Shown: positions 3,248 to 62,108 of the stretch, one piece after another | Position numbering within the stretch: position 1 is the stretch's first letter | Layout of the letters: each line of letters starts with the position of its first letter | Source of the DNA: Macrostomum lignano | Lineage: Eukaryota | Direction: 5' to 3' | Length of the DNA stretch: 64,000 nt | Assembly (NCBI GenBank): GCA_002269645.1 | Contig: NIVC01001010.1 | Coordinates: 310,001 to 374,000 of the forward strand | Notes under the pieces: generated by a model | Told to the model about the DNA's origin: nothing | What the model saw: the letters and a program-made list of their open reading frames with translations, nothing else | The model's database searches: none | Made by a program: the position numbers and the translations under genes

Positions 3248-5111
3248 CTAAACAGCTTCCGCCTCTGCACTGGGCTCCGCAGCGACCTCCCTGACGGTCT
3301 TGCCATTGTCATCGGTTCCATCGTCCTCCGCCGCGGACTCGGCAGCCCGCAGCAGGGCAGCCAGGTGCCGCTCGGTGTACAAGTGCTCGCTAGCCGGCGA
3401 ATCAGCGGGCAGCTCGCCAGCGCACAGGCGGCACCGACCGCCAGGAAGGCCCAGCCAGCTGGCCGCAGGACTTGGCGACCGCTGAGTGGACGAGCCGCGG
3501 CCACGGCCACCGCCGCCGGCGTCGCCGCTGCTCACATTGTTGCTGAGCCAGGCGCGGATGAGACGGCCGGGGAGGCCGAGAGCGGCGGCCACAGATTCAA
3601 CCTGCGGCTCGGACGGGGCGCCGCCGTCGATGCGCAACAGCTGCTGTTGCTGCTCGAAAAGCAGCCGCAGAGCCACCGCCTGCTGGGGACTCGGCAAGCC
3701 GGCCGCGGCAGGCGTCTGCGGTTGCTGCCGCTGTTGCTGCTGCTGCCCAGCAGTGCTGAGATCGAGCGGAGCGTCCAGCTCCGGGTTCTCTTCCTCCTCC
3801 TCGGCGGCAACAGCAGTCCGACAGCCGAGCAGCCAGCTGCTGTCCGAAGGAATCTGCGACGCAGGCGTCGGCTGCCGCCGTTCAATGCGCGCCCGCTTGC
3901 GCCCGCTGGCAGCTTCGGCAGCTTCAACGGCTGCTGGAGCAGCGGCAGCAGTGGACATCTCGTCGCCGGCGGCGGCCGCGGAAGTAGCGGACGGCCGCGG
4001 ACGCTTTCGCCTCGCGGCGCCGAGCGCCTGAGTGTGCAGCTGAACGCGCACGTGCTGCTCAATCTCCTCGGGCCGGGCGGGGAGCACCTCCACCTTGCCG
4101 GTCTTCTCGTACTCCTCCAGGTTGAGCTGCGTAGCCGGCGGGATGCTGAAGTTATATGGCGAGTCTTTGCAGCGCTGCCGCTCCTTGAACAGCGTGTTGC
4201 GGAACCAGTGCTTGATCACCTTCACAGGCAGGCCGGTGTCGCCCGACATCTGAGCGATCAGCTGATCGTTTGGCGAGCTGTTCAGATTGAAATTGGCCTT
4301 CAGCACGCGTAGCTGGTCCTCCGTGATGCGGGTCCGCGCCCGCTTGCCGTTCTGCTGGCCGCCGCCACCGCCGCCACCGCCCGCGTCGCTACCGCCGTCT
4401 CCACTGCAGCCGCCAGCGCTGCCGGCGCCGCCGCCGCCACTGCTACCGCCGCTGGCAGCCGCGGACGAGCTGCTGTTGGTGCCAACCGACGAAGTAATCG
4501 CGGATGTCGCAGCAGCGGCACTCGTTGCCATCGCGATGGACGCAGCCGGAGTGACCGCTGCTGACTGTGCCGGCTTCGCCGACGGGGCCGTGCCGTTAGC
4601 GGCCTGAGCTGCCGCGGCGGCTACAGCGGCTGCTGCGGCGGCCACCGATGTTACTGGCGGCCCGGGCGGCGGCTTCGTAAGCGGCGACGGAATCAGCGGA
4701 GGCAGGAAGTGGCAGAGCAGCGGCGGCGGGTGGGTGGGCGGAGATCCGGCCGACGAGGCAGCGATGGAATGCGGCGGCAGCGGCGGCGGCGGCGGCGGCG
4801 GAACAGCCAGCGAGGCCGCAGACATGGACGATGGTGTCGGATGCGGCGGGTGCAGCGGGAACGGCAACAGCAGCGGCGGCAGGAAGAGCGGCAGCTGATG
4901 AGACTTGGCGTGCGACCTCAGGTGCTCCGGGCCGGCGCAGGCGAGGCCGCAGAGCGGGCAGCGGCAGCTGGCCAGCCGCTTGTGCGTGTTGGAGCGCATG
5001 TGGGCCGCCAGCTGGATCTGGGTGCCGAAGCCCACCTGGCACTGCTCGCAGCGGTAGACCTCGCCGCATCCGCCAGTTGGCGAAGATTCCGACGGAACGG
5101 CCGAGACGGAA

Positions 5112-5143
<32 letters not shown>

Positions 5144-5402
5144 TGGCGTCAAGTGAAGAGTCTCGTAGTGGAGGCGGAGCTCCACCGAGCTACCCAGCCG
5201 CTGGTGGCAAAGCAGGCAGGCGAGCCGACTGGCCGCGTGCTGCCGTCGGTGCCGCTCCAGCTGGCGGCCATCCCTGAAGGCCAGACGGCAGGCGGCGCAG
5301 GCGTGGGGGAATCTGGCGGAGGAAGCCGCCGCTGCCGCCGAACCGCTGGACGGCAGCTCGGCGTCGCCGCCGGCAGAGCGGGTTGTCTTGGCGTGGATTT
5401 CG
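3248..5402 (-). CDS. zfh2: zfh2-like last coding exon (C2H2 fingers, homeodomain, PLDLS motif)
   Basis: Acceptor CCCGCAG|C, in frame with ORF 3248..5185. Homeodomain [19 protein letters not shown]...[25 protein letters not shown] is ZFHX/zfh2 type. Stop at 3248-3250. Confidence 0.92.
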
Positions 5403-14214: not shown

Positions 14215-15810
14215 CTGGGGTGGCACTGTTGTGGGGTGGCACTGTTGTGAGGTGGCACTGTTGTGAGGTGGCACTGTTGTGAGGTGGCACTGTTGTGAGG
14301 TGGCACTGTTGTGAGGTGGCACTGTTGTGAGGTGGCACTGTTGTGAGGTGGCACTGTTGTGAGGTGGCATTGTTGTGAGGTGGCATTGTTGTGAGGTGGC
14401 ACTGTTGTGAGGTGGCACTGTTGTGAGGTGGCACTGTTGTGAGGTGGCACTGTTGTGAGGTGGCACTGTTGTGAGGTGGCACTGTTGTGAGGTGGCATTG
14501 TTGTGAGGTGTCACTGTTGTGAGGTGGCACTGTTGTGGGGTGGCACTGTTGTGAGGTGGCACTGTTGTGGGGTGGCACTGTTGTGAGGTGGCACTGTTGT
14601 GGGGTGGCACTGTTGTGAGGTGGCACTGTTGTGAGGTGGCACTGTTGTGGGGTGGCACTGTTGTGAGGTGGCACTGTTGTGGGGTGGCACTGTTGTGAGG
14701 TGGCACTGTTGTGAGGTGGCACTGTTGTGGGGTGGCACTGTTGTGGGGTGGCACTGTTGTGAGGTGGCACTGTTGTGAGGTGGCATTGTTGTGAGGTGGC
14801 ACTGTTGTGGGGTGGCACTGTTGTGGGGTGGCACTGTTGTGAGGTGGCACTGTTGTGGGGTGGCACTGTTGTGAGGTGGCACTGTTGTGAGGTGGCACTG
14901 TTGTGAGGTGGCACTGTTGTGAGGTGGCACTGTTGTGAGGTGGCACTGTTGTGAGGTGGCACTGTTGTGAGGTGGCACTGTTGTGAGGTGGCATTGTTGT
15001 GAGGTGGCATTGTTGTGAGGTGGCACTGTTGTGAGGTGGCACTGTTGTGAGGTGGCACTGTTGTGAGGTGGCACTGTTGTGAGGTGGCACTGTTGTGAGG
15101 TGGCACTGTTGTGAGGTGGCATTGTTGTGAGGTGTCACTGTTGTGAGGTGGCACTGTTGTGGGGTGGCACTGTTGTGAGGTGGCACTGTTGTGGGGTGGC
15201 ACTGTTGTGAGGTGGCACTGTTGTGGGGTGGCACTGTTGTGAGGTGGCACTGTTGTGAGGTGGCACTGTTGTGGGGTGGCACTGTTGTGAGGTGGCACTG
15301 TTGTGGGGTGGCACTGTTGTGAGGTGGCACTGTTGTGAGGTGGCACTGTTGTGGGGTGGCACTGTTGTGGGGTGGCACTGTTGTGAGGTGGCACTGTTGT
15401 GAGGTGGCATTGTTGTGAGGTGGCACTGTTGTGGGGTGGCACTGTTGTGGGGTGGCACTGTTGTGAGGTGGCACTGTTGTGAGGTGGCACTGTTGTGAGG
15501 TGGCACTGTTGTGGGGTGGCACTGTTGTGGGGTGGCACTGTTGTGAGGTGGCACTGTTGTGAGGTGGCACTGTTGTGAGGTGGCACTGTTGTGAGGTGGC
15601 ACTGTTGTGGGGTGGCACTGTTGTGAGGTGGCACTGTTGTGAGGTGGCACTGTTGTGAGGTGGCACTGTTGTGGGGTGGCACTGTTATAGGGTGGCATTG
15701 TTGTGAGGTGGCACTGTTGTGAGGTGGCACTGTTGTGAGGTGGCACTGTTGTGAGGTGGCACTGTTGTGAGGTGGCACTGTTGTGGGGTGGCACTGTTAT
15801 AGGGTGGCAC
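14215..15810. repeat. 16-bp minisatellite with higher-order structure
   Basis: Unit GGTGGCACTGTTGTGA/G. Confidence 0.97.
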
Positions 15811-15914
15811 TCATATCGCTCATAGACAGTTGAATTGTGCGAGAACTGCAGCTGCTATGACTTGTAATTAATGAATAAAAGCCGAGCAAGGCAAAGCAAA
15901 GCGCCGGTGCTCAC

Positions 15915-16038
15915 CACCCGTATCAGTAGGCAGGCTGTTGGCAAACCCAGTCGCCGCAGATGCCGCAGAGGCGGGCAGCACGGAGGCCAGCTTGTTGGGA
16001 TCGGTGAGCAGGCCGCCGCCCTTCTGCTGCAGTTTGTG
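15915..16038 (-). CDS. zfh2: zfh2-like coding exon 2 (not in the ORF track)
   Basis: Acceptor TTGCAG|CAC and donor G|GTGAGC; 124 nt, phase 0 to 1, encoding HKLQQKGGGLLTDPNK. It reconciles the phases of exons 1 and 3. Confidence 0.75.
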
Positions 16039-16229
16039 CTGCAAAGTTAGAAATTCGGTGAGTTCAGTGAATTACACTAAGGCTGGGTCTGGGTTCCTCA
16101 GGCAGTCTTCATTGATATAAATAGTCTCAAGCCTTCCGTATATTTATGCTATAAATAATGCAGCCCAGGCCCCTCGAGTCCGCTCGTGGCGGCGGTCACA
16201 GTGAGGGGTTTGAAGTTGTTTCATCGAAA

Positions 16230-17360
16230 CAATATTCGGAATTTTTTGTTGGAACAAATGGCTGAGTCAGACCTCTAAAGGGCTAGTTTAGAATTTTATA
16301 ATATAAAGCGAAAAAAACACCGTATTGACGTCCCCAGACAGACAACCACAGCTGTGCACTCGATGCACATCTGTACCTCTCTCCCCAAATTTACTAAATG
16401 CATATAAGATATAGCACTAGTATTGCTTACACCGAGTCTAAAAGGAAGTCAAGGTGGAACAACGGGGGTTTACAAGCCCTAGATTTAACTCGTTCACAAA
16501 CTCGAATACTTCTCTTCTCAAGCTCAAAGTGCCACAAACTCGAATACTTCTCTTCTCAAGCTCAAAGTGCCACAAACTCGAATACTTCTCAAGCTCAAAG
16601 TGCCACAAACTCGAATACTTCTCTTCTCAAGCTCAAAGTGCCACAAACTCGAATACTTCTCAAGCTCAAAGTGCCACAAACTCGAATACTTCTCTTCTCA
16701 AGCTCAAAGTGCCACAAACTAGAATGCTTCTCTTCTCAAGCTCAAAGTGCCACAAACTCGAATACTTCTCTTCTCAAGCTCAAAGTGCCACAAACTCGAA
16801 TACTTCTCTTCTCAAGCTCAAAGTGCCACAAACTAGAATGCTTCTCTTCTCAAGCTCAAAGTGCCAAAAACTCGAATACTTCTCTTCTCAAGCTCAAAGT
16901 GCCACAAACTCGAATACTTCTCTTCTCAAGCTCAAAGTGCCAAAAACTCGAATACTTCTCTTCTCAAGCTCAAAGTGCCAAAAACTCGAATACTTCTCTT
17001 CTCAAGCTCAAAGTGCTAAAAACTCGAATACTTCTCTTCTCAAGCTCAAAGTGCCACAAACTCGAATACTTCTCTTCTCAAGCTCAAAGTGCCACAAACT
17101 CGAATACTTCTCAAGCTCAAAGTGCCACAAACTCGAATACTTCTCAAGCTCAAAGTGCCACAAACTCGAATACTTCTCGAGAATTGTTTTGCCCTCTTAG
17201 TAGAATTACTCGGCAAACTACTCAGCTGAGATGCCGCAGCTTCATTTAAAATACATTTGGCTTTTAATTCTCAAATCAAATCTTTCGTGGACTTGGCTCT
17301 TTGTTTAATTCGCCTTATGCTTTGAGCGGAGAGATCGAATTCTGCGGTACTTGTTCTGGA
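16230..17360 (-). pseudogene. decayed P-element/THAP9-like transposase sequence downstream of the THAP ORF
   Basis: Hand translation gives RRIKQRAKSTKDLI*ELKAKCILNEAAASQL and KQY*CYILYAFSK, resembling the coiled-coil and following segments of THAP9/P transposases. It carries stops and a frameshift and is split by a minisatellite. Similarity was judged by eye. Confidence 0.5.
16495..17178. repeat. 38/33-bp minisatellite within the decayed transposase
   Basis: Unit CTCGAATACTTCTC(TTCTC)AAGCTCAAAGTGCCACAAA. Confidence 0.95.
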
Positions 17361-17361
17361 G

Positions 17362-17810
17362 CAGGGGTTGGCAAACTCTTTGTCTCCAGGGCCAGATGGA
17401 GAACCTAGCGCGTGACTGCGGGCCAGAGGAGGAGAGAGAGGAAGAGAGGAGAGGAAGAGGAGAGGAGAGGAGAGGAGAGAGAGGAGAGGAGAGGAGAGGA
17501 GAGGAGAGGAGAGGAGAGGAGAGGAGAGGAGAGGAGAGGAAAAGAAAGACCGGAGAGGAGAGGAGAGGAGAGGAGAGGAGAAGAGAGGAGAGGAAAAGAA
17601 AGACCAGAGAGGAGAGGAGAGAGAGGGGCGAGGAGAGAAGAGAGAGGAGAGGAGAGGAGAGGAGAGAGGATAAGAAAGATGAGGAGAGAGGAGATTAGAG
17701 AAGATAGCTGAAAAGAGACAAGCCTGGAGCGGGCCGAATTGCAATTGTGAAGTTTCAAAGGACCCGATGACCGGACAGAGAGGCTTGGCGGGCCGATCTG
17801 GACTCTAAAG
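17362..17810 (+). mobile_element. hAT-Charlie-like non-autonomous fragment with internal (GAGAG)n
   Basis: Starts CAGGGGTTGGCAAACTCTTT...AGGGCCAGAT, a Charlie/MER58-like terminus. Purine microsatellite at about 17425-17700; the far TIR was not seen. Confidence 0.6.
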
Positions 17811-17868
17811 CAAACGTACTAGGATTTCATTAGCCTAGCTGCACTTTTCTTGGGCCGGCAATGGGCAG

Positions 17869-18414
17869 CTAGAAGCCTACTGTATCTGCGCTTGAGATCT
17901 TCACCTTATCGAAGCAGTTAGCATGGAGGTCCGGTCTTGGATGCTCATCTTTTTCACTGCCAGCCACAGGGGCTTTCGGCTTGCTGCTGCTGCTCTCTGT
18001 TGATTGACAAAATGCAGCGGAATCAATTTCGCGAGCTGCGGCCGCGGTGGCAGTCTTTCGTTTCTTTTCAGCTTTCGGCTGCAGATGGTCAGGGAACGCC
18101 GGGAAGATGGAAGGAACGGCGTTCGGATACAGGCGTCTTCTGACGGTAGGCAGAAAGCCTGCGAACTGCTCCTTGAAGCAGGATTGCTCAAAATGAATCG
18201 AGCAGACTTGCGTGGATGGCGATGGCTCGAAGTTTTTTCGTCTCAGCGCTACCAGCCACCTGTTCCTGAGCTGCTTGTCCTTTGGAAAAGTATGGAAGGA
18301 CACTCCGGGCAGAGACATTGCTGCGTTGTTTGAGCAGCCAAAAGCGCAGCAAAAGCTGCCGTGATTTCCTCTTATTTTTCTCGGCAATTTGGAAGATTCC
18401 GATTGTTGTTCCAT
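17869..18414 (-). CDS. THAP-domain ORF (P-element/THAP9-like N-terminus) nested in zfh2 intron 1
   Basis: Complete C2CH THAP signature: CAFGC, FHTFP, RWL, CSIHF, AVPSIF. Open for 181 aa; in-frame acceptor at 18438 and donor at 17905. Confidence 0.85.
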   Translation of the reverse strand: MEQQSESSKLPRKIRGNHGSFCCAFGCSNNAAMSLPGVSFHTFPKDKQLRNRWLVALRRKNFEPSPSTQVCSIHFEQSCFKEQFAGFLPTVRRRLYPNAVPSIFPAFPDHLQPKAEKKRKTATAAAAREIDSAAFCQSTESSSSKPKAPVAGSEKDEHPRPDLHANCFDKVKISSADTVGF

Positions 18415-19019
18415 TTCGTTTTGAATAAGTTTGCTTAGCTGTGTAAAATTAGTTGGCCTTGCTATTCATACTTCGGTCCCCAGGCCGTATTAATATGCAT
18501 GCTGGTTTAAAATGGGGCAGACGGCTGGCCTCCCCAGGCCCCAAATATCGATCGTTTTTGGATGCGGTTCACGCGGGGAGAGGACCATTTTTGCTTTGTA
18601 ATTTGGCAACAAACGAGCCCAGACAAGCAATGTTGGATGCATGCAACAGTCAAGTTTATCTGGTCTATCTGTGACCGTGTCTGTCTGGAACAAAGACCTA
18701 TGGGCTCTACTAAGACCTAAAAAATCTTATTTATAGTTATGATGCTATTTTTAGAATTTGCGGCAATAAATCATTCGCAATTTTATTTTGTGGCTTTGCG
18801 GGTTCGAAGCGTCGAGATTCTGTGGGAATTGGGGAGCTCAAATGACAACTACGGCCAGGCAGGGAATACTTTACATAGAGTAGAGTATTCCCTGGGCCAG
18901 GTGTTCGAGATTTGGCCGAAAAAACTGAGCAATAAAGAAGCTCACTACTTAATAGAAAATTTAGAGACGGAATAGCTTCCATTGATGTAATATTATCCTA
19001 TACATCCCTTTTCGGAGAG

Positions 19020-19650
19020 GCGGGTGAGAGAGACGGAGGAGGGAGGGAGAAAGGCGGAGAGAGGTGGGAGAGAGACAGAGGAGAAGGAGACAGGCGGGAG
19101 AAAGGCGGGGAGAGCAGAGGAGAGAGAGAGGCGGGAGAGAGGTGGGGGAGAGGCGGGAGAGAGGTGGGGGGAGGCGGGGGAGGCAGAAGAGAGAGGCGGG
19201 AGAGAGAGGCGGGAGAGAGGCGGGAGAGAGAGGCGGGAGAGAGGTGGGGGAGAGGCGGGAGAGAGGTGGGGGAGAGGCGGGGGAGGCAGAAGAGAGAGGC
19301 TGGAGAGAGGTGGGGGAGAAGTGGGAGAGGCAGAGGAAAGAGGCGGGAGAGGTGGGGGAGAGGCGGGGGAGGCAGAAGAGAGAGGCGGGAGAGAGGCGGG
19401 AGAGGCGGGAGAGAGGCGGGAGAGGCGGGAGAGAGGCGAGAGAGGCGGGAGAGGCGGGATAGAGAGGCGGGAGAGAGGCGGGGAGAGGTGGGGGAGAGGT
19501 GGGGGAGAGGCGGGGAGAGGTGGGGGAGAGAGGCGAGAGAGGCAGGAGAGAAGCGGGAGAGGCAGAAGAGAGAGGCAGAGGAGAGAGGTGGGGGAGAGGT
19601 GGGAGAGAGGCGGGGGAGAGGCGGAGGAGAGAGGCGGGAGAGAGACGGAG
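19020..19650. repeat. purine-rich GAGAGGCGG(G) low-complexity repeat (zfh2 intron 1)
   Basis: Begins about 35 nt after the exon 1 donor. Confidence 0.9.
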
Positions 19651-19684
19651 ACCCCAGCAATACCAGCACCTGCGTCTTGCTCAC

Positions 19685-20769
19685 CTCTCTCAGCTTGTGG
19701 CCAGGCTGTTGGAAGTGCCGCAGCAGTTCCGCCTTAGTCTGGCAGACGCAGCTGCACAGCTGGCAGCGATAGCGACAGCAGCCGGGGCCGCTAGTGAGCC
19801 TCCGCTCCTCGCTGCAGAGGTGCAGTAGCAGGTAGGCATTCAGCTGGTGACTGGGGAGTGCCAGGTGCAGCTGCATTTTGTGCAGCGAGGCCGCCACGTA
19901 GCCGCAGGCATTGCAGCGCAGCTGCACAGGGTTGCCACTGGTTGCAGTGGACAGCCGGGAGGTGCCGCCGTTGGCATCGCCGCCGGCGCCCAGCCGCAGG
20001 TGGTTGAGCAGCTGCAGCCGCTGCATGTGCTTATCAGTCTTGCAGTGGAGGTGAAAATTCGCCTTCAGATTGGAGCGATAGTCGCATAGCGCGCACTGCC
20101 AGTAGCCTGCGGCGTAGCCTGTGGCCTCCGAGCTGGGCTCAAGTCGTGGCTCCACGGAGTGCGCGTGAAGCTCCGGCAGCGAGTCGGTGTGGAAGCTGTC
20201 GCACACCTGGCAGGTGAACAGGTGCGACGGATCGTTGGCGGATCGAGCACCGGCTGACCGAGGCTGATGCGGCTGTCTGTGCTGTTGGGCCTGCTGCTGC
20301 TGATGGTGCCGCCCGCTGCCGCCCGGCTTCGGGTGTATCGCCGATCGAGCAGCGCCCGAGGCCGAAGTCGACGCCGGAGCGAGGCCTGACAAAGCGGAGG
20401 CGCCGCCGTTTCCGCCAGAGCCGGCAATGACGCCGGCGGCGCGCTGCAGATCGTGCACGTTGTTGCAGTGCTTATCGGACTGCATGTGGATGGCCAGGTT
20501 GCCCTTGGTGGTGGTGCTGTAGTTGCACACCTCGCAGCGGTAGGGCTTGTAGCCGCAGTTGTAGGTCTCGCCGCGGGCTAGCCGCGGATGGCTCTGGTTA
20601 GTCAGGCAGTAGTGGCAGGCATCGCATCGGCCCTGACCGCCAGGATCGCCCGAGCCGGTTTCCGGGTGCTTCTCTTTGAGGTGAATCTCCAGAGTCTCCT
20701 GGTACTTGTAGTGCCAGTTGCATTTCGGACACTTGATGTGCTTGTTCAAGTGGCGTGCCTGGCCGCTGC

Positions 20770-20804
<35 letters not shown>

Positions 20805-21697
20805 TGCGAGTCGGCTGGCAGATGCGGCATCGGCGGTGGCGGCCCCAGCGGCGGCGGCAGGAAGGCTGTCCAGGGAAAGGCGGACAAGAGGCCGGCAAAG
20901 GAGGGCGGCGGATGAGGCGGCGGCAGCGGTGGCAGCGGCAGAGACGGCAGCTGGACAGGCGGCATGGATGCTGCAGCTTCATCAGGTTCATCCGCGGACT
21001 CGTCAGCAGACTCGGGGTTGGCCGCATCAGCAGCTCTTTCCTCGGTCTCCGCCTCGTCGCCTTTGTTATTCTCCTCGTCCGAGCCATTCGCGGCTTCCTG
21101 GTCCTGTTCGCTGCGGCTGCCGCTGTGCCACGGGCGGTCCTCGAACAGCCGCAGGCGGAGTCCGCGCCCGCCCCAGTCAGCGATGACGCCAGCCACTCCG
21201 GCGCCAAACGGTTCGTCCGGCGCCGCCAGACTGTGCCCCGTGCAGTGTCCGGTCAGCTCGTCCGCCCTGGCCAGCCGCCGCCTGCAGGCGAGACAGACAA
21301 GCAGCGGCGGCTCTTCAGTTGGCGAGGCGGCGGACAGTCGGCAGTAATCGACTGCGACCGAGCGACCGAGGGCTCTGTGGAGGCGGGTCTCGGCGGCCTG
21401 ACGACATTCGGCCAGCGACGTCAGCGGATCAGCGGCTGCACCGCTACTGGATCGCTCGCGCAGCAGGAAGGCTCGAACTCCGCACTGCTCGGCCAGGCAC
21501 AGGAGCACAGAATCTGTTGCAGACTCGGCCAGCAGCAGCTCGGACTCTTCATCAGTCACGGCGTCAGTGGAGTCTGCGCCAATTTTGTTATCATCGTTGA
21601 CTTCGGTCTGACCAGCCAGGAGGAGCAGCACCTGGAGGCTGGCGCCACTGCTGGCGCGGATTTTGGCGCCAATTAATCGGTTGAAATCTGTCGACAT
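19685..21697 (-). CDS. zfh2: zfh2/ZFHX3-4-like zinc-finger homeobox protein, coding exon 1
   Basis: ATG at 21697. Encodes the ZFHX signature KCPKCNWHYKYQETLEIHLKEKHP...HPRLARGETYNCGYKPYRCEVCNYSTTTKGNLAIHMQSDKH plus further C2H2 fingers. Phase-0 donor GAG|GTGAGC at 19685. The Pro/Ser-rich tail of the listed ORF is intronic repeat. Confidence 0.92.
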
Positions 21698-25676: not shown

Positions 25677-26423
25677 CTAGGCAGCCAGTAGCGCGGGCAC
25701 CAGACTGGGGAACCAGAACGCCCTTTCGCCGCTCGGCTCGCCGTCGTCAACCCAGGCGAAAGCTTCGCGCACCAGCTGGTCGAGCACGCGGTCGACTCGC
25801 TCCGGCGCCCAGGCCAGGGCTGTCCGACAAGCTGACGCCGTCACTCGGCCGCCATTGCCGTCGGCAAGGCGCATCACCGAGTTGGCATCGAGGCTGAGCT
25901 CGCCAGGCACCGATTGCACCAATCGCCGGTTGCCAAGCGTTACCAGAGTGAATCCGTTGCCTAGGCAACGGAGCTTATCCACGGCGCGAACAATGTCGTC
26001 CTCGGAGACCGGATCTCCGGCGCCTCGTCCAGCATTGAGCGCTTTCAATAAATCGCTAACGTCCATCAGACCGCCGTGCTTGTGGCTAGTTGCCATGGTA
26101 ACCTCGATAATCTTGACGCCAAGCTCGAAATAGAAGCCGCCAACCCCGAGCATGTCGGACCAGAAGCCTTTGCCGGATTGCAGCGGATCGACGCCAATAG
26201 CGGCGCACATCTGCTGGAACTGCGCCCGGAACTGCTGATTGCGTCGAATCTTGTCGGCGTGCTTCCTGGCGAACTCCTCCAGGTGTTGCCGGAACGCGCC
26301 AACCTGGGCGCTGACCTGCGCCAGCTCCTGGTCGGCCAGTTGGCCGCCTTTGCTTTTGAATCGATCGGCCGCGGCCGCGTGCCGCTGAGCGCCGCCAACG
26401 CCAACACCGCGTCCGCGTCGCAT
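25677..26423 (-). CDS. SNF8: ESCRT-II subunit SNF8/Vps22/EAP30, single exon
   Basis: ATG at 26423 gives MRRGRGVGVGG...QFRAQFQQMCAAIGVDPLQSGKGFWSDMLGVGGFYFELGVKIIEV...VQSVPGELS...AWVDD...FWFPSL, a full-length Vps22 pattern (248 aa). Confidence 0.95.
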   Translation of the reverse strand: MRRGRGVGVGGAQRHAAAADRFKSKGGQLADQELAQVSAQVGAFRQHLEEFARKHADKIRRNQQFRAQFQQMCAAIGVDPLQSGKGFWSDMLGVGGFYFELGVKIIEVTMATSHKHGGLMDVSDLLKALNAGRGAGDPVSEDDIVRAVDKLRCLGNGFTLVTLGNRRLVQSVPGELSLDANSVMRLADGNGGRVTASACRTALAWAPERVDRVLDQLVREAFAWVDDGEPSGERAFWFPSLVPALLAA

Positions 26424-48749: not shown

Positions 48750-50299
48750 CCGATAGACAGTTCCCGATAGACAGTTCCCGATAGACAGTTCCCGATAGAC
48801 AGTTCCCGATAGACAGTTCCCGATAGACAGTTCCCGATAGACAGTTCCCGATAGACAGTTCCCGATAGACAGTTCCCGATAGACAGTTCCCGATAGACAG
48901 TTCCCGATAGACAGTTCCCGATAGACAGTTCCCGATAGACAGTTCCCGATAGACAGTTCCCGATAGACAGTTCCCGATAGACAGTTCCCGATAGACAGTT
49001 CCCGATAGACAGTTCCCGATAGACAGTTCCCGATAGACAGTTCCCGATAGACAGTTCCCGATAGACAGTTCCCGATAGACAGTTCCCGATAGACAGTTCC
49101 CGATAGACAGTTCCCGATAGACAGTTCCCGATAGACAGTTCCCGATAGACAGTTCCCGATAGACAGTTCCCGATAGACAGTTCCCGATAGACAGTTCCCG
49201 ATAGACAGTTCCCGATAGACAGTTCCCGATAGACAGTTCCCGATAGACAGTTCCCGATAGACAGTTCCCGATAGACAGTTCCCGATAGACAGTTCCCGAT
49301 AGACAGTTCCCGATAGACAGTTCCCGATAGACAGTTCCCGATAGACAGTTCCCGATAGACAGTTCCCGATAGACAGTTCCCGATAGACAGTTCCCGATAG
49401 ACAGTTCCCGATAGACAGTTCCCGATAGACAGTTCCCGATAGACAGTTCCCGATAGACAGTTCCCGATAGACAGTTCCCGATAGACAGTTCCCGATAGAC
49501 AGTTCCCGATAGACAGTTCCCGATAGACAGTTCCCGATAGACAGTTTCCAATAGACAGTTTCCAATAGACAGTTCCCGATAGACAGTTCCCGATAGACAG
49601 TTCCCGATAGACAGTTCCCGATAGACAGTTCCGATAGACAGTTCCCGATAGACAGTTCCCGATAGACAGTTCCCGATAGACAGTTCCCGATAGACAGTTC
49701 CCGATAGACAGTTCCCGATAGACAGTTCCCGATAGACAGTTCCCGATAGACAGTTCCCGATAGACAGTTCCCGATAGACAGTTCCCGATAGACAGTTCCC
49801 GATAGACAGTTCCCGATAGACAGTTCCCGATAGACAGTTCCCGATAGACAGTTCCCGATAGACAGTTCCCGATAGACAGTTCCCGATAGACAGTTCCCGA
49901 TAGACAGTTTCCAATAGACAGTTTCCAATAGACAGTTCCCGATAGACAGTTCCCGATAGACAGTTCCCGATAGACAGTTCCCGATAGACAGTTCCCGATA
50001 GACAGTTCCCGATAGACAGTTCCCGATAGACAGTTCCCGATAGACAGTTCCCGATAGACAGTTCCCGATAGACAGTTCCCGATAGACAGTTCCCGATAGA
50101 CAGTTCCCGATAGACAGTTCCCGATAGACAGTTCCCGATAGACAGTTCCCGATAGACAGTTCCCGATAGACAGTTCCCGATAGACAGTCCCCCATAGACA
50201 GTTCCCCATAGACAGTTCCCGATAGACAGTTCCCGATAGACAGTTCCCGATAGACAGTTCCCGATAGACAGTTCCCGATAGACAGTCCCCCATAGACAG
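48750..50299. repeat. 14-bp minisatellite filling tubulin intron 1
   Basis: Unit GATAGACAGTTCCC, very homogeneous. Confidence 0.97.
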
Positions 50300-50308
50300 T
50301 CAACTCAC

Positions 50309-60408: not shown

Positions 60409-60550
60409 GCAAGAGCTACGGCATGAGTGCGCGGCGCTACAGAGCTATGGCTATGCGACGCTGTTATCAAAAGTTCAATAAAATTTATTCCACTCACAAT
60501 ATAAATAGCGACCGGTTTGCTAGCAAGTTTAAACAGCTGGTTGTCTATCG
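60409..60550 (+). CDS. FAM234B: FAM234-like exon H
   Basis: Acceptor CGCAG|GC; ends FKQLVVYR; phase-2 donor CG|GTGAGT. Confidence 0.7.
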
Positions 60551-62070
60551 GTGAGTGAAGTGATGGTGTTTATCTGTGAGTGAAGTGATGGTGTTTATCT
60601 GTGAGTGAAGTGATGGTGTTTATCTGTGAGTGAAGTGATGGTGTTTATCTGTGAGTGAAGTGATGGTGTTTATCTGTGAGTGAAGTGATGGTGTTTATCT
60701 GTGACTGAAGTGATGGTGTTTATCTGTGAGTGAAGTGATGGTGTTTATCTGTGAGTGAAGTGATAAGTGTTTATCTGTGAGTGAAGTGATGGTGTTTATC
60801 TGTGAGTGAAGTGATGGTGTTTATCTGTGAGTGAAGTGATGGTGTTAATTTATTTGTGAGTGACGTGATGGTGTTTATCTGTGAGTGACGTGATGGTGTT
60901 TATCTGTGAGTGAAGTGATGGTGTTTATCTGTGAGTGAAGTGGTGTTTATCTGTGAGTGAAGTGATGGTGTTTATCTGTGAGTGAAGTGATAAGTGTTTA
61001 TCTGTGAGTGAAGTGATGGTGTTTATCTGTGAGTGAAGTGATGTTGTTAATTTATTTGTGAGTGACGTGATGGTGTTTATCTGTGAGTGACGTGATGGTG
61101 TTTATCTGGGAGTGAAGTGATGGTGTTTATCTGTGAGTGAGGTGATGGTGTTTATCTGTGAGTGAGTGAGTGAAGTGATGGTGTTTATCTGTGAGTGAAG
61201 TGATGGTGTTTATCTGTGAGTGAAGTGATGGTGTTTATCTGTGAGTGAAGTGATGGTGTTTATCTGTGAGTGAAGTGATGGTGTTTATCTGTGAGTGAAG
61301 TGATGATGTTTATCTGGGAGTGAGTGAGTGAATTGATAGTGTTTATCAGTGAGTGACGTGTTGGTGTTTATCTGTGAGTGACGTGATGGTGTTTATCTGT
61401 GAGTGACGTGATGGTGTTTATCTGTGAGTGACGTGATGGTGTTTATCTGTGAGTGACGTGATGGTGTTTATCTGTGAGTGAAGTGATAACTGTTTATCTG
61501 TGAGTGAATTGATGGTGTTTATCTGTGAGTGAAGTGATGGTGTTTATCTGTGAGTGAAGTGATGGTGTTTATCTATGAGTGAGGTGATGGTGTTTATCTG
61601 TGAGTGAGTGAGTGAATTGATAGTGTTTATCAGTGAGTGACGTGTTGGTGTTTATCTGGGAGTGAAGTGATGGTGTTTATCTGTGAGTGAGGTGATGGTG
61701 TTTATCTGTGAGTGAGTGAGTGAAGTGATGGTGTTTATCTGTGAGTGAAGTGATGGTGTTTATCTGTGAGTGAAGTGATGGTGTTTATCTGTGAGTGAAG
61801 TGATGGTGTTTATCTGTGAGTGAAGTGATGGTGTTTATCTGTGAGTGAAGTGATGGTGTTTATCTGTGAGTGAAGTGATGGTGTTTATCTGTGAGTGAAG
61901 TGATGGTGTTTATCTGTGAGTGAAGTGATGATGTTTATCTGGGAGTGAGTGAGTGAATTAATAGTGTTTATCTGTGAGTGACGTGTTGGTGTTTATCTGG
62001 GAGTGAAGTGATGGTGTTTATCTGGGAGTGAGTGAGTGAAGTGATGGTGTTTATCTGTGAGTGAAGTGCT
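60551..62070. repeat. 25-bp minisatellite beginning at the exon H donor
   Basis: Unit GTGAGTGAAGTGATGGTGTTTATCT. Confidence 0.96.
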
Positions 62071-62108
62071 GGTATTTACCAACCGCTTCTACCTACATGC
62101 ACTCGCAG

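What the first reader, a model, noticed from the sequence alone, without database searches (positions are those of the whole stretch)
17905..18438. Intact THAP exon with phase-0 splice sites at both ends inside zfh2 intron 1: candidate host-transposase fusion exon
Seen: on the zfh2 strand, the THAP ORF is preceded by a good acceptor (CTAATTTTACACAG|CTA at 18438), in frame with its ATG (LSKLIQNE-MEQQ...). It is followed by a phase-0 donor (AAG|GTGAAG at 17905). This defines a 534-nt, stop-free, 178-codon cassette. The host intron it sits in is also phase 0 (19685 to 16038), so inclusion would give an in-frame ZFH2 with an added THAP DNA-binding domain. The rest of the transposase is broken by stops and a frameshift, while the THAP exon is clean. 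Known: transposase DNA-binding domains are captured by host genes through alternative splicing, and P-element transposases have their own introns. Inference: a THAP-ZFHX chimeric transcription factor, or a nested domesticated THAP gene. The donor lacks +5G, and both sites could just be the element's native splice sites.
Basis: partly seen in the sequence, partly recalled or inferred. Interest (0 to 1): 0.75.

Follow-up and report, generated by a model that had tools for sequence, protein, structure and literature searches.

The report
Broken transposon's THAP gene piece in intron
An intact THAP DNA-binding reading frame does sit inside an intron of a zinc-finger-homeobox gene, but it is most likely the surviving front end of a broken P/THAP9-type jumping gene, and nothing available here shows it is spliced into the host protein.

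Summary
On the minus strand there is a 181-codon ORF (18414..17869) with a complete THAP zinc finger. It is preceded by CTAATTTTACACAG|CTA (exon start 18438) and contains AAG|GTGAAG (exon end 17905). Both sites are phase 0, inside a phase-0 host intron (19685 to 16038).

The host is a ZFHX3/4 (zfh-2 family) gene, but probably not in a fly. The closest THAP relative is a Macrostomum lignano (flatworm) protein, and the window is packed with minisatellites.

Downstream of the THAP ORF, only a short coiled-coil remnant of a P/THAP9-like transposase can be detected, in another frame and with a stop codon. No catalytic domain and no terminal repeats were found.

The donor lacks the GT[G/A]AG motif that both host donors have. 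The frame just after it faintly continues the transposase, so the GT may be former coding sequence. Motifs of this quality arise jointly in about 1% of shuffles, under criteria chosen after the fact.

The constitutive junction rebuilds a motif that is uninterrupted in homologues, and none of the 120 listed homologues carries THAP.

Best reading: a transposon relic, possibly a stand-alone THAP-only ORF like the KP repressor. The fusion exon is possible but unproven (about 8%).

The parts
17869..18414 (-). Intact 181-codon ORF (ATG..TAG) encoding an N-terminal extension, a THAP zinc finger, a KKRK-containing linker and a short tail
18103..18351 (-). THAP domain proper (C22, C27, C71, H74; AVPSIF box)
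   Evidence: Pfam PF05485 E=2.9e-19. Invariant columns present. Fold matches 2d8r, 2ko0, 2jtg and 3kde.
18439..18452 (-). Acceptor-like motif CTAATTTTACACAG, with a putative CTAAT branch point and CAG. An exon would start at 18438, phase 0, 24 nt before the ATG.
   Evidence: Function not shown.
17899..17907 (-). Donor-like motif AAG|GTGAAG (last exon base 17905, phase 0). It lacks +5G.
   Evidence: Function not shown.
17822..17902 (-). Frame-shifted stretch EDLKRRYSRLLAAHCRPKKSAARLMKS directly after the donor-like GT. It may continue the ancestral transposase coiled coil.
   Evidence: Matches P0066 and P0025 at the corresponding position (z about 5 each). Not significant over all 103 relatives. 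Suggestive only.
17425..17694 (.). Degenerate CT/GA-rich microsatellite separating the THAP ORF from the coiled-coil remnant
17217..17357 (-). Remnant of the P/THAP9-type post-THAP coiled coil (RTSTAEFDLSAQSIRRIKQRAKSTKDLI*ELKAKCILNEAAASQLSS). It lies in a different frame from the THAP ORF and has an in-frame TGA at 17273-17271.
   Evidence: 14 of 103 related proteins align with z>=3, against 0 and 1 for the other two frames. Summed score z=4.2, with 0 of 200 shuffles reaching it.
16495..17178 (.). 38-bp minisatellite (18.5 copies) that begins where the transposase remnant ends. Nothing transposase-like lies beyond it.
19679..19699 (-). End of the upstream ZFHX exon (..GHKLRE, last base 19685) and host donor GTGAGC
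15915..16050 (-). Host acceptor CTAACTTTGCAG and the next ZFHX mini-exon (16038 to about 15915, HKLQQKGGGLLTDPNKLASV..., followed by G|GTGAGC)
19015..19648 (.). 11-bp (GAGAGGCGGGA)n array filling the first part of the host intron

Best explanation
The feature is the 5' fragment of a P-element/THAP9-type DNA transposon. It lies in the sense orientation inside an intron of a ZFHX3/4 (zfh-2 family) gene, and that intron appears to be specific to this lineage. The genome is probably a flatworm of the Macrostomum type.

What survives of the element is:
- the transposase's own start codon;
- the THAP DNA-binding domain and the nuclear-localisation-like linker, as an intact 181-codon ORF;
- a short, frame-shifted and stop-bearing piece of the coiled-coil dimerisation region further downstream.

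The HTH, RNase H, GTP-binding and C-terminal domains are gone, and so are the terminal inverted repeats. Where they would lie there is a microsatellite and a 38-bp minisatellite.

On this reading the element is dead as a transposon. The AG 24 nt before the ATG and the GT near the end of the ORF are incidental sequence, not working cis-splice sites of the host gene. The host mRNA simply removes the whole 3.65-kb intron (19684..16039).

Shown here: the THAP identity and integrity, the coiled-coil remnant, the absence of a transposase body and of TIRs, and the host junction.

Inferred: that the motifs are not used, and that the ORF is open because the fragment is young or by chance.

If the ORF is expressed at all, the likeliest product is a stand-alone protein of about 180 aa with only a THAP domain.
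For: - THAP is intact.
- The closest relative, P0004, is from Macrostomum lignano and is 63% identical over 155 aa, linker included. That THAP sits in a 900-aa model that also has a P-like transposase body.
- A coiled-coil remnant is detected in one frame only.
- tblastn with six full-length or N-terminal transposases finds nothing but the THAP ORF in all 64 kb.
- Pfam finds nothing in the three downstream frames.
- No inverted repeat links the two flanks.
- The donor-like site lacks the GT[G/A]AG motif seen at both host donors and dominant in M. lignano.
- The frame after the GT resembles the coiled coil of two relatives at the matching position.
- Related transposases are uninterrupted ORFs.
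- The host junction 19685|16038 rebuilds a conserved, uninterrupted homologue motif.
- None of the 120 listed ZFHX homologues has THAP.
Against: - The ORF has 181 codons (198 counting the open leader) without a lesion. The roughly 85 recognisable downstream codons carry at least one stop and apparently two frame changes. If lesions were uniform, the chance of none in the ORF is between about 0.002 (3 lesions per 85 codons) and about 0.12 (1 per 85). This is my arithmetic. It hints that the ORF is better preserved than its surroundings.
- The acceptor-like site is the only phase-0 AG in the leader. It has a CTAAT element placed like the CTAAC of the true host acceptor. Sites like it arise in fewer than 5% of shuffles.
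- The sense orientation and matching phase at all four sites are what exonisation needs.
- The age of the insertion could not be measured, because no other copy or orthologous locus was reachable.
Confidence: 0.55

Rival explanations
1. Nested, independently expressed THAP-only gene. The truncated element still makes a nuclear THAP protein of about 180 aa, either from its own promoter or by spliced-leader trans-splicing at the AG at 18439. The protein binds the family's transposon ends or other THAP sites. It would act like the KP-type repressors encoded by internally deleted P elements, or it may already be domesticated. Selection on this protein keeps the ORF open.
For: - The ORF has its own ATG and stop, and it is far cleaner than the downstream remnant.
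- It carries a KKRK linker, and the model shows a confident THAP fold with disordered tails.
- Small non-autonomous P elements often encode repressors such as the 207-aa KP protein (PMC7776569).
- In M. lignano 30-39% of genes are SL trans-spliced at an AG just upstream of the ORF (PMC5730564; PMC8629364).
- Many stand-alone THAP proteins of 177-189 aa exist among the relatives.
Against: - KP needs the dimerisation (leucine-zipper) region. Here the coiled coil is out of frame and carries a stop.
- ACACAG does not fit the [T/C]TNCAG motif of M. lignano SL acceptors.
- No canonical AATAAA lies near the stop.
- No identical or near-identical protein is present in the protein collections. The host species seems to be absent from them altogether.
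- No TIRs remain for such a repressor to act on locally.
Confidence: 0.25
2. Host-transposase fusion. The THAP exon is spliced to the upstream ZFHX exon at 19685>18438. It then either rejoins the gene at 17905>16038 as an in-frame 178-aa cassette, or ends at the element's own stop as an alternative 3'-terminal exon. Either way the product is a ZFHX zinc-finger protein with an added THAP DNA-binding domain.
For: - The THAP ORF is on the same strand as the host gene.
- All four sites are phase 0, and 534 nt are stop-free.
- The site at 18438 is the single phase-0 AG in the leader, with a branch-point-like CTAAT, and resembles the host acceptor.
- Joint chance of the two motifs is about 1% under post hoc criteria.
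- THAP is intact while the rest of the element is wrecked.
Against: - The donor lacks +5G, unlike both host donors.
- The GT may lie in former continuous coding sequence.
- The polypyrimidine tract is weak (9/15).
- The insert would split a motif that is uninterrupted in homologues.
- None of the 120 listed ZFHX homologues carries THAP.
- CTAAY-N3-12-YAG occurs at chance frequency in the window: 78 observed against 82 expected.
- No transcript evidence exists.
Confidence: 0.08
3. An ordinary host THAP-family gene that was never part of a transposon and happens to be nested in the intron.
For: Most database relatives are short THAP-only proteins annotated as THAP1-, THAP2- or THAP6-like.
Against: - A coiled-coil segment typical of THAP-transposase N-termini lies downstream in another frame, with a stop.
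- The closest relative is embedded in a model with a transposase body.
- The next closest relative with an attached body, P0283, is 53% identical and carries Tnp_P_element and RNaseH_N domains.
Confidence: 0.05

Closest known systems
Internally deleted or truncated P / THAP9-like elements, including KP-type elements (Drosophila P element; zebrafish Pdre; PMC7776569)
   Same: - An N-terminal THAP domain followed by a basic linker and a coiled coil.
- Loss of the catalytic part, leaving a short ORF that encodes only the DNA-binding end.
- The predicted fold matches the P-element THAP-DNA complex 3kde.
   Different: - No TIRs, subterminal repeats or 8-bp target-site duplication could be found.
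- The dimerisation region is out of frame, so the ORF is shorter in function than KP.
- The missing interior is occupied by minisatellites, not a clean internal deletion.
- The host is probably a flatworm.
Macrostomum lignano THAP-type protein A0A1I8H379 (P0004)
   Same: Its C-terminal 153 residues are 63% identical to the window ORF. The match includes the N-terminal extension (HGSFCC), RRRLYPNAVPSIFP, the KKRKTATAAAA linker and the ELHA/DLHA end.
   Different: - That THAP is the last part of a 900-aa computed gene model. The model starts with a different, partial THAP (34-37% identical) and has a P-like transposase body.
- The model stops 5 residues before the window's donor-like site.
- Its DNA could not be retrieved.
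Host-transposase fusion genes made by exon capture (for example vertebrate KRAB-, SCAN- or THAP-containing fusions; Cosby et al. 2021, from general knowledge)
   Same: - A transposase DNA-binding domain in the sense orientation in a host intron.
- An acceptor-like site just upstream of the transposase ATG.
- The rest of the transposon decayed.
   Different: - No chimeric transcript, no orthologous conservation and no evidence of selection is available.
- The donor is weak.
- No ZFHX-THAP architecture is seen among the 120 listed homologues.
Domesticated P-derived neogenes of Drosophila (obscura and montium groups) and THAP9 (Quesneville et al. 2005, from general knowledge; PMC7776569)
   Same: An immobile P-derived coding sequence without TIRs.
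   Different: Those genes retain most of the transposase or repressor-length coding sequence and are conserved across species. Here only about 180 aa remain, and conservation is untested.

Membership tests
THAP domain (PF05485) | Profile match above Pfam's gathering score over the whole model | tested here: met
   70 bits against a cut-off of 23.9, model positions 1-87 of 87
THAP domain (PF05485) | C2CH zinc ligands with C-X2-4-C-X35-53-C-X2-H spacing, plus the conserved P, W, F and AVPTIF box | tested here: met
   C22-X4-C27-X43-C71-X2-H74. P44, W53, F75, P101 and AVPSIF are present. All columns invariant in 39 THAP sequences are kept.
THAP domain (PF05485) | THAP fold | tested here: met
   AlphaFold pLDDT 85-96 for residues ~21-110. 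Foldseek matches 2d8r (E=7e-6), 2ko0, 2jtg and 3kde, with target-normalised TM 0.63-0.71.
THAP domain (PF05485) | Sequence-specific DNA binding | not testable with these tools
   Needs EMSA, SELEX or ChIP
P-element / THAP9-type transposase gene | Coiled-coil (leucine-zipper) dimerisation region after the THAP domain | tested here: inconclusive
   A remnant is detected at 17357-17217 (14 of 103 relatives with z>=3, in one frame only). It is out of frame with THAP and has a stop.
P-element / THAP9-type transposase gene | HTH, split RNase H catalytic domain, GTP-binding insertion and C-terminal domain (PF12017, PF21787 and related) | tested here: not met
   tblastn with six transposases finds nothing beyond THAP in 64 kb. 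Pfam finds nothing in the downstream frames at E<=10.
P-element / THAP9-type transposon | Terminal inverted repeats and 8-bp target-site duplication | tested here: not met
   No inverted repeat of at least 14/16 between the 5' flank (18415-19030) and the 3' flank (16039-17440). None either, apart from low-complexity matches.
P-element / THAP9-type transposon | Multiple copies in the genome | tested here: inconclusive
   No second copy in the window. The genome itself is not in the searchable collections.
Host-transposase fusion (captured DNA-binding-domain exon) | Sense orientation and reading-frame compatibility with the flanking host exons | tested here: met
   Same strand, all four sites phase 0, 534 nt stop-free
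Host-transposase fusion (captured DNA-binding-domain exon) | Functional splice sites and chimeric transcripts | not testable with these tools
   Motifs only. The acceptor is fair (CTAAT..CAG). The donor is weak, with no +5G.
Host-transposase fusion (captured DNA-binding-domain exon) | Purifying selection and conservation at the orthologous locus | not testable with these tools
   No orthologous or paralogous locus was retrievable. There is only an internal hint: the ORF is cleaner than the remnant.
Host-transposase fusion (captured DNA-binding-domain exon) | The same domain architecture in related proteins | tested here: not met
   None of the 120 listed ZFHX-like proteins has PF05485
KP-type truncated-element repressor | One ORF with the THAP domain plus the dimerisation region, from an internally deleted element that keeps its ends | tested here: not met
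   The ORF stops 11 codons after the donor-like site. The coiled coil is in other frames. No TIRs.
ZFHX3/4 / zfh-2 family (host gene) | ZFHX-type C2H2 fingers plus homeodomains | tested here: met
   PF24056 in the exon 19686-21697 and a homeodomain in 3248-5185 on the same strand. The named hits are ZFHX3, ZFHX4 and ATBF1.

The most novel reading that the evidence does not exclude
In a flatworm-type genome, the front end of a P/THAP9-like transposon has been captured by a ZFHX (zfh-2 family) gene. It would serve either as an in-frame cassette or as an alternative terminal exon. The result would be a zinc-finger-homeobox protein with an extra THAP DNA-binding domain. That would be a transposase-capture transcription factor outside vertebrates, caught at an early stage while remnants of the transposase are still visible beside it.
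Probability: 0.08. Interest if true: 0.65.

Novelty: new member of a known kind. Interest (0 to 1): 0.28.

Why it matters
If the THAP exon really were spliced into ZFHX, it would be a young, still-legible example of transposase-domain capture creating a new transcription factor in an invertebrate. It would be directly testable by RT-PCR.

As the evidence stands, it is one more truncated P/THAP9-like insertion. Its practical value is as an annotation warning. Gene predictors may well join this open, in-frame THAP ORF to the ZFHX exons. The closest relative in Macrostomum lignano is already part of a suspicious two-THAP computed model.

It also corrects the assumed organism: this is not a Drosophila zfh2 locus.

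Tried and rejected
- Exact-sequence look-ups of the THAP ORF, of the neighbouring EAP30/Vps22 gene (two start choices) and of P0004 in the assembly index and the protein collection all came back empty. The species and any allelic or paralogous locus therefore could not be retrieved.
- The word-indexed protein search found no close relative. It even missed P0004, so its silence on copy number means little.
- The host exon has no near-identical homologue in the database.
- The search for TIRs between the two flanks found nothing.
- Pfam on all downstream frames found nothing.
- A generic profile of post-THAP tails recovered only the linker.
- The frame-2 'continuation' after the donor looked convincing against two hand-picked relatives. 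It was not significant against all 103 (z=1.1), so I keep it only as suggestive.
- I first counted a 12/15 direct repeat flanking the host intron and thought of a target-site duplication. A script recount gave 10/15, so I withdrew that idea (notes).
- The M. lignano spliced-leader sequence is not in the window.
- Rfam and tRNA scans were empty.
- The branch-point-plus-AG motif is not enriched in the window, so it cannot serve as a genome-specific acceptor predictor.
Full report
**1. What is in the sequence**

Reading the minus strand, the upstream host exon ends ...CAC AAG CTG AGA GAG|GTGAGC, with its last base at 19685. This is phase 0 in the frame that is open from 21697.

The intron then contains, in order:
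- an 11-bp (GAGAGGCGGGA)n array (19648-19015);
- about 570 nt of unique sequence;
- the motif CTAATTTTACACAG|CTAAGC (AG at 18440-18439);
- 24 nt later, the ATG at 18414 of a 181-codon ORF that ends with TAG at 17871-17869.

Within that ORF, AAG|GTGAAG places a GT at 17904-17903 on a codon boundary.

The host acceptor is CTAACTTTGCAG|CAC, with the exon starting at 16038. A 124-nt mini-exon follows and ends G|GTGAGC at about 15915.

**2. The ORF is a genuine, intact THAP protein**

- Pfam THAP scores 70 bits (E=2.9e-19) over the whole model.
- PDB sequence matches are THAP2 (2d8r), THAP1 (2jtg, 2ko0) and THAP11.
- In an alignment of 39 THAP proteins, every invariant column is present in the window protein: C22, C27, P44, W53, C71, S72, H74, F75, P101.
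- An AlphaFold model is confident for residues ~21-110 (block pLDDT 85-96). Foldseek matches it to 2d8r, 2ko0, 2jtg and the Drosophila P-element THAP-DNA complex 3kde.
- The first 20 residues and the last ~70 are predicted to be unstructured.

**3. The host gene and the organism**

The exon 21697-19686 carries ZFHX3-type C2H2 fingers. The large minus-strand ORF at 5185-3248 carries a homeodomain. Named database relatives are ZFHX3, ZFHX4 and ATBF1 from crustaceans, chelicerates, annelids and molluscs, at 30-40% overall identity. No near-identical protein exists in the collections. 'zfh2' is therefore correct as a family name, but nothing points to Drosophila.

The closest relative of the THAP ORF among 1.8 billion representatives is UniRef A0A1I8H379 of the flatworm Macrostomum lignano. 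It is 63% identical over 155 residues, including the normally fast-evolving linker.

The window is about 47% GC. Roughly a third or more of it consists of about 30 unrelated minisatellite arrays of 0.4-1.6 kb each. That fits a Macrostomum-type genome, in which simple and tandem repeats make up 15% of the assembly and average introns are 1.1-1.4 kb (PMC5730564). The species itself could not be identified: exact look-ups of the THAP ORF and of the neighbouring EAP30/Vps22 gene found nothing.

**4. The ORF is the front end of a P/THAP9-type transposase, and little else is left**

Running tblastn with six related full-length or N-terminal transposases against the whole window hits only the THAP ORF. 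Pfam finds nothing in the three frames between 17904 and 16039.

One piece is recoverable. The frame containing RTSTAEFDLSAQSIRRIKQRAKSTKDLI*ELKAKCILNEAAASQLSS (17357-17217) aligns to the 'QSKRRL...L..ELK.K' coiled coil that follows the linker in THAP transposases.
- In an unbiased test against 103 relatives, 14 reach z>=3 in this frame, against 0 and 1 in the other two frames.
- The summed score has z=4.2, and none of 200 shuffles reached it.
- This frame differs from the THAP frame and contains a TGA at 17273-17271.

Between the THAP ORF and this remnant lies a degenerate CT-rich microsatellite (17694-17425). Immediately after the remnant, a 38-bp minisatellite begins (17178-16495).

No inverted repeat links the 5' and 3' flanks, and no second copy is in the window. 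The catalytic two-thirds of the transposase is simply absent.

**5. Are the splice-like sites meaningful?**

*Enumeration.* The site at 18438 is the only phase-0 AG in the 17-codon open leader. Three phase-0 GTs follow the domain, and 17905 is the best of them.

*Shuffling.* A comparable donor appears in 17.7% of shuffles and a comparable acceptor in 4.6%, about 0.8% jointly. The criteria were chosen after seeing the sites, so this is a lower bound.

*In favour of function.* The acceptor has a CTAAT branch-point-like element 10 nt upstream, an arrangement much like the real host acceptor (CTAAC-TTTGCAG).

*Against function.*
- That composite motif occurs at chance frequency in the window, 78 observed against 82 expected.
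- The pyrimidine tract is weak (9/15).
- The donor lacks +5G. Both host donors are GTGAGC, and GT[G/A]AG is the dominant donor motif in M. lignano (PMC8629364).
- The hexamer ACACAG also fails the [T/C]TNCAG motif of M. lignano spliced-leader acceptors.
- The frame that starts 2 nt after the GT reads EDLKRRYSRLLAAH.... It resembles the coiled coil of two relatives at the corresponding distance from the THAP domain (z about 5 each). It is not significant over all 103 relatives.
- Related full-length transposases are single uninterrupted ORFs of about 900 aa on 3.1-3.7 kb contigs.
- The nearest relative with DNA in hand has THAP, linker, coil and HTH in one 314-codon ORF.

Together these points make it more likely that the GT lies in former coding sequence next to a frameshift than that it is a native or acquired donor.

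**6. The host junction**

Joining 19685 to 16038 gives ...GHKLRE|HKLQQKGGGLLTDPNKLASV.... This lines up with the continuous 'H-LRNESLRQMQ-KE-G...IF-V' segment found directly after the same zinc finger in homologues. In several homologues on large genomic contigs, the ORF runs through this point and ends about 40 residues later, which is where the window's mini-exon also ends.

Three things follow:
- The constitutive junction is well supported.
- The intron that carries the THAP fragment looks specific to this lineage.
- A 178-residue insert would split a conserved segment.

None of the 120 listed ZFHX homologues has a THAP domain.

**7. Weighing**

The anatomy permits exonisation but does not show it.

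The one internal argument for selection is that the THAP ORF has no lesion in 181 codons, while about 85 recognisable downstream codons have at least one stop and apparently two frame changes. Under uniform decay, that has a probability between about 0.002 and 0.12, depending on which lesions are counted. The numbers are small. The frame changes could reflect lost introns. The lesions also cluster around repeat expansions, which are rampant in this genome.

My weights are:
- about 55% on a plain transposon relic;
- about 25% on an independently expressed THAP-only ORF. This resembles the KP-type repressors of deleted P elements (PMC7776569), although here the dimerisation region is out of frame;
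- about 8% on a ZFHX-THAP fusion, as a cassette or a terminal exon;
- about 5% on a non-transposon THAP gene.

**8. Novelty**

Truncated P/THAP9-like elements and THAP-only ORFs are well known, so this is a new member of a known kind. The fusion reading would be interesting, but it needs transcript and comparative data that these tools cannot supply.

Noticed in passing
window 1-64000 (e.g. 618-2035, 14219-15811, 48750-50300, 60542-62078): About 30 unrelated minisatellite arrays (units of 12-39 bp, each 0.4-1.6 kb) make up roughly a third or more of the window. Many of them create long spurious ORFs in the six-frame list.
   Followed up: partly
window 19685/16038 junction (minus strand): The intron carrying the THAP fragment interrupts a segment that is one continuous ORF in ZFHX homologues from other animals, so the intron looks specific to this lineage. 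The exon ends flanking it both encode HKL (CACAAGCTG / CACAAACTG, 8/9 identical). Over 15 nt only 10 match, so this is a weak hint of insertion-type intron gain at best.
   Followed up: partly
window 16495-17178: The 38-bp minisatellite starts exactly where the transposase remnant stops. One frame of its unit reads REVFEFVAL, faintly like the 'YSEEVRxFAxTLHFYS' motif at the start of the P/THAP9 HTH region. The array may have grown out of transposase coding sequence. This was not tested statistically.
   Followed up: no
window 25677-26423 (minus strand): An apparently intronless 248-aa EAP30/Vps22 (ESCRT-II) gene lies about 4 kb upstream of the ZFHX ORF on the same strand (Pfam PF04157, E=6.6e-50). 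Its exact sequence is not in the protein collection.
   Followed up: partly
P0004 (UniRef A0A1I8H379, Macrostomum lignano): This 900-aa computed protein begins with a partial THAP, continues with a P-like transposase body that lacks its last ~100 residues, and ends with a second, different THAP that is the window ORF's closest relative. It looks like a gene model that joins two adjacent elements. The same kind of join could be made at the window's locus.
   Followed up: partly
window 18998-21697 (minus strand): The host exon's reading frame stays open for 229 codons past the real donor. This is only because the CT-rich microsatellite contains no stop codons. It is an artefact that inflates the apparent exon to 899 aa.
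   Followed up: yes
window 18860-18894: A small near-perfect palindrome (CAGGGAATACT...AGTATTCCCTG) lies in the unique sequence 5' of the THAP ORF. Its meaning is unknown.
   Followed up: no
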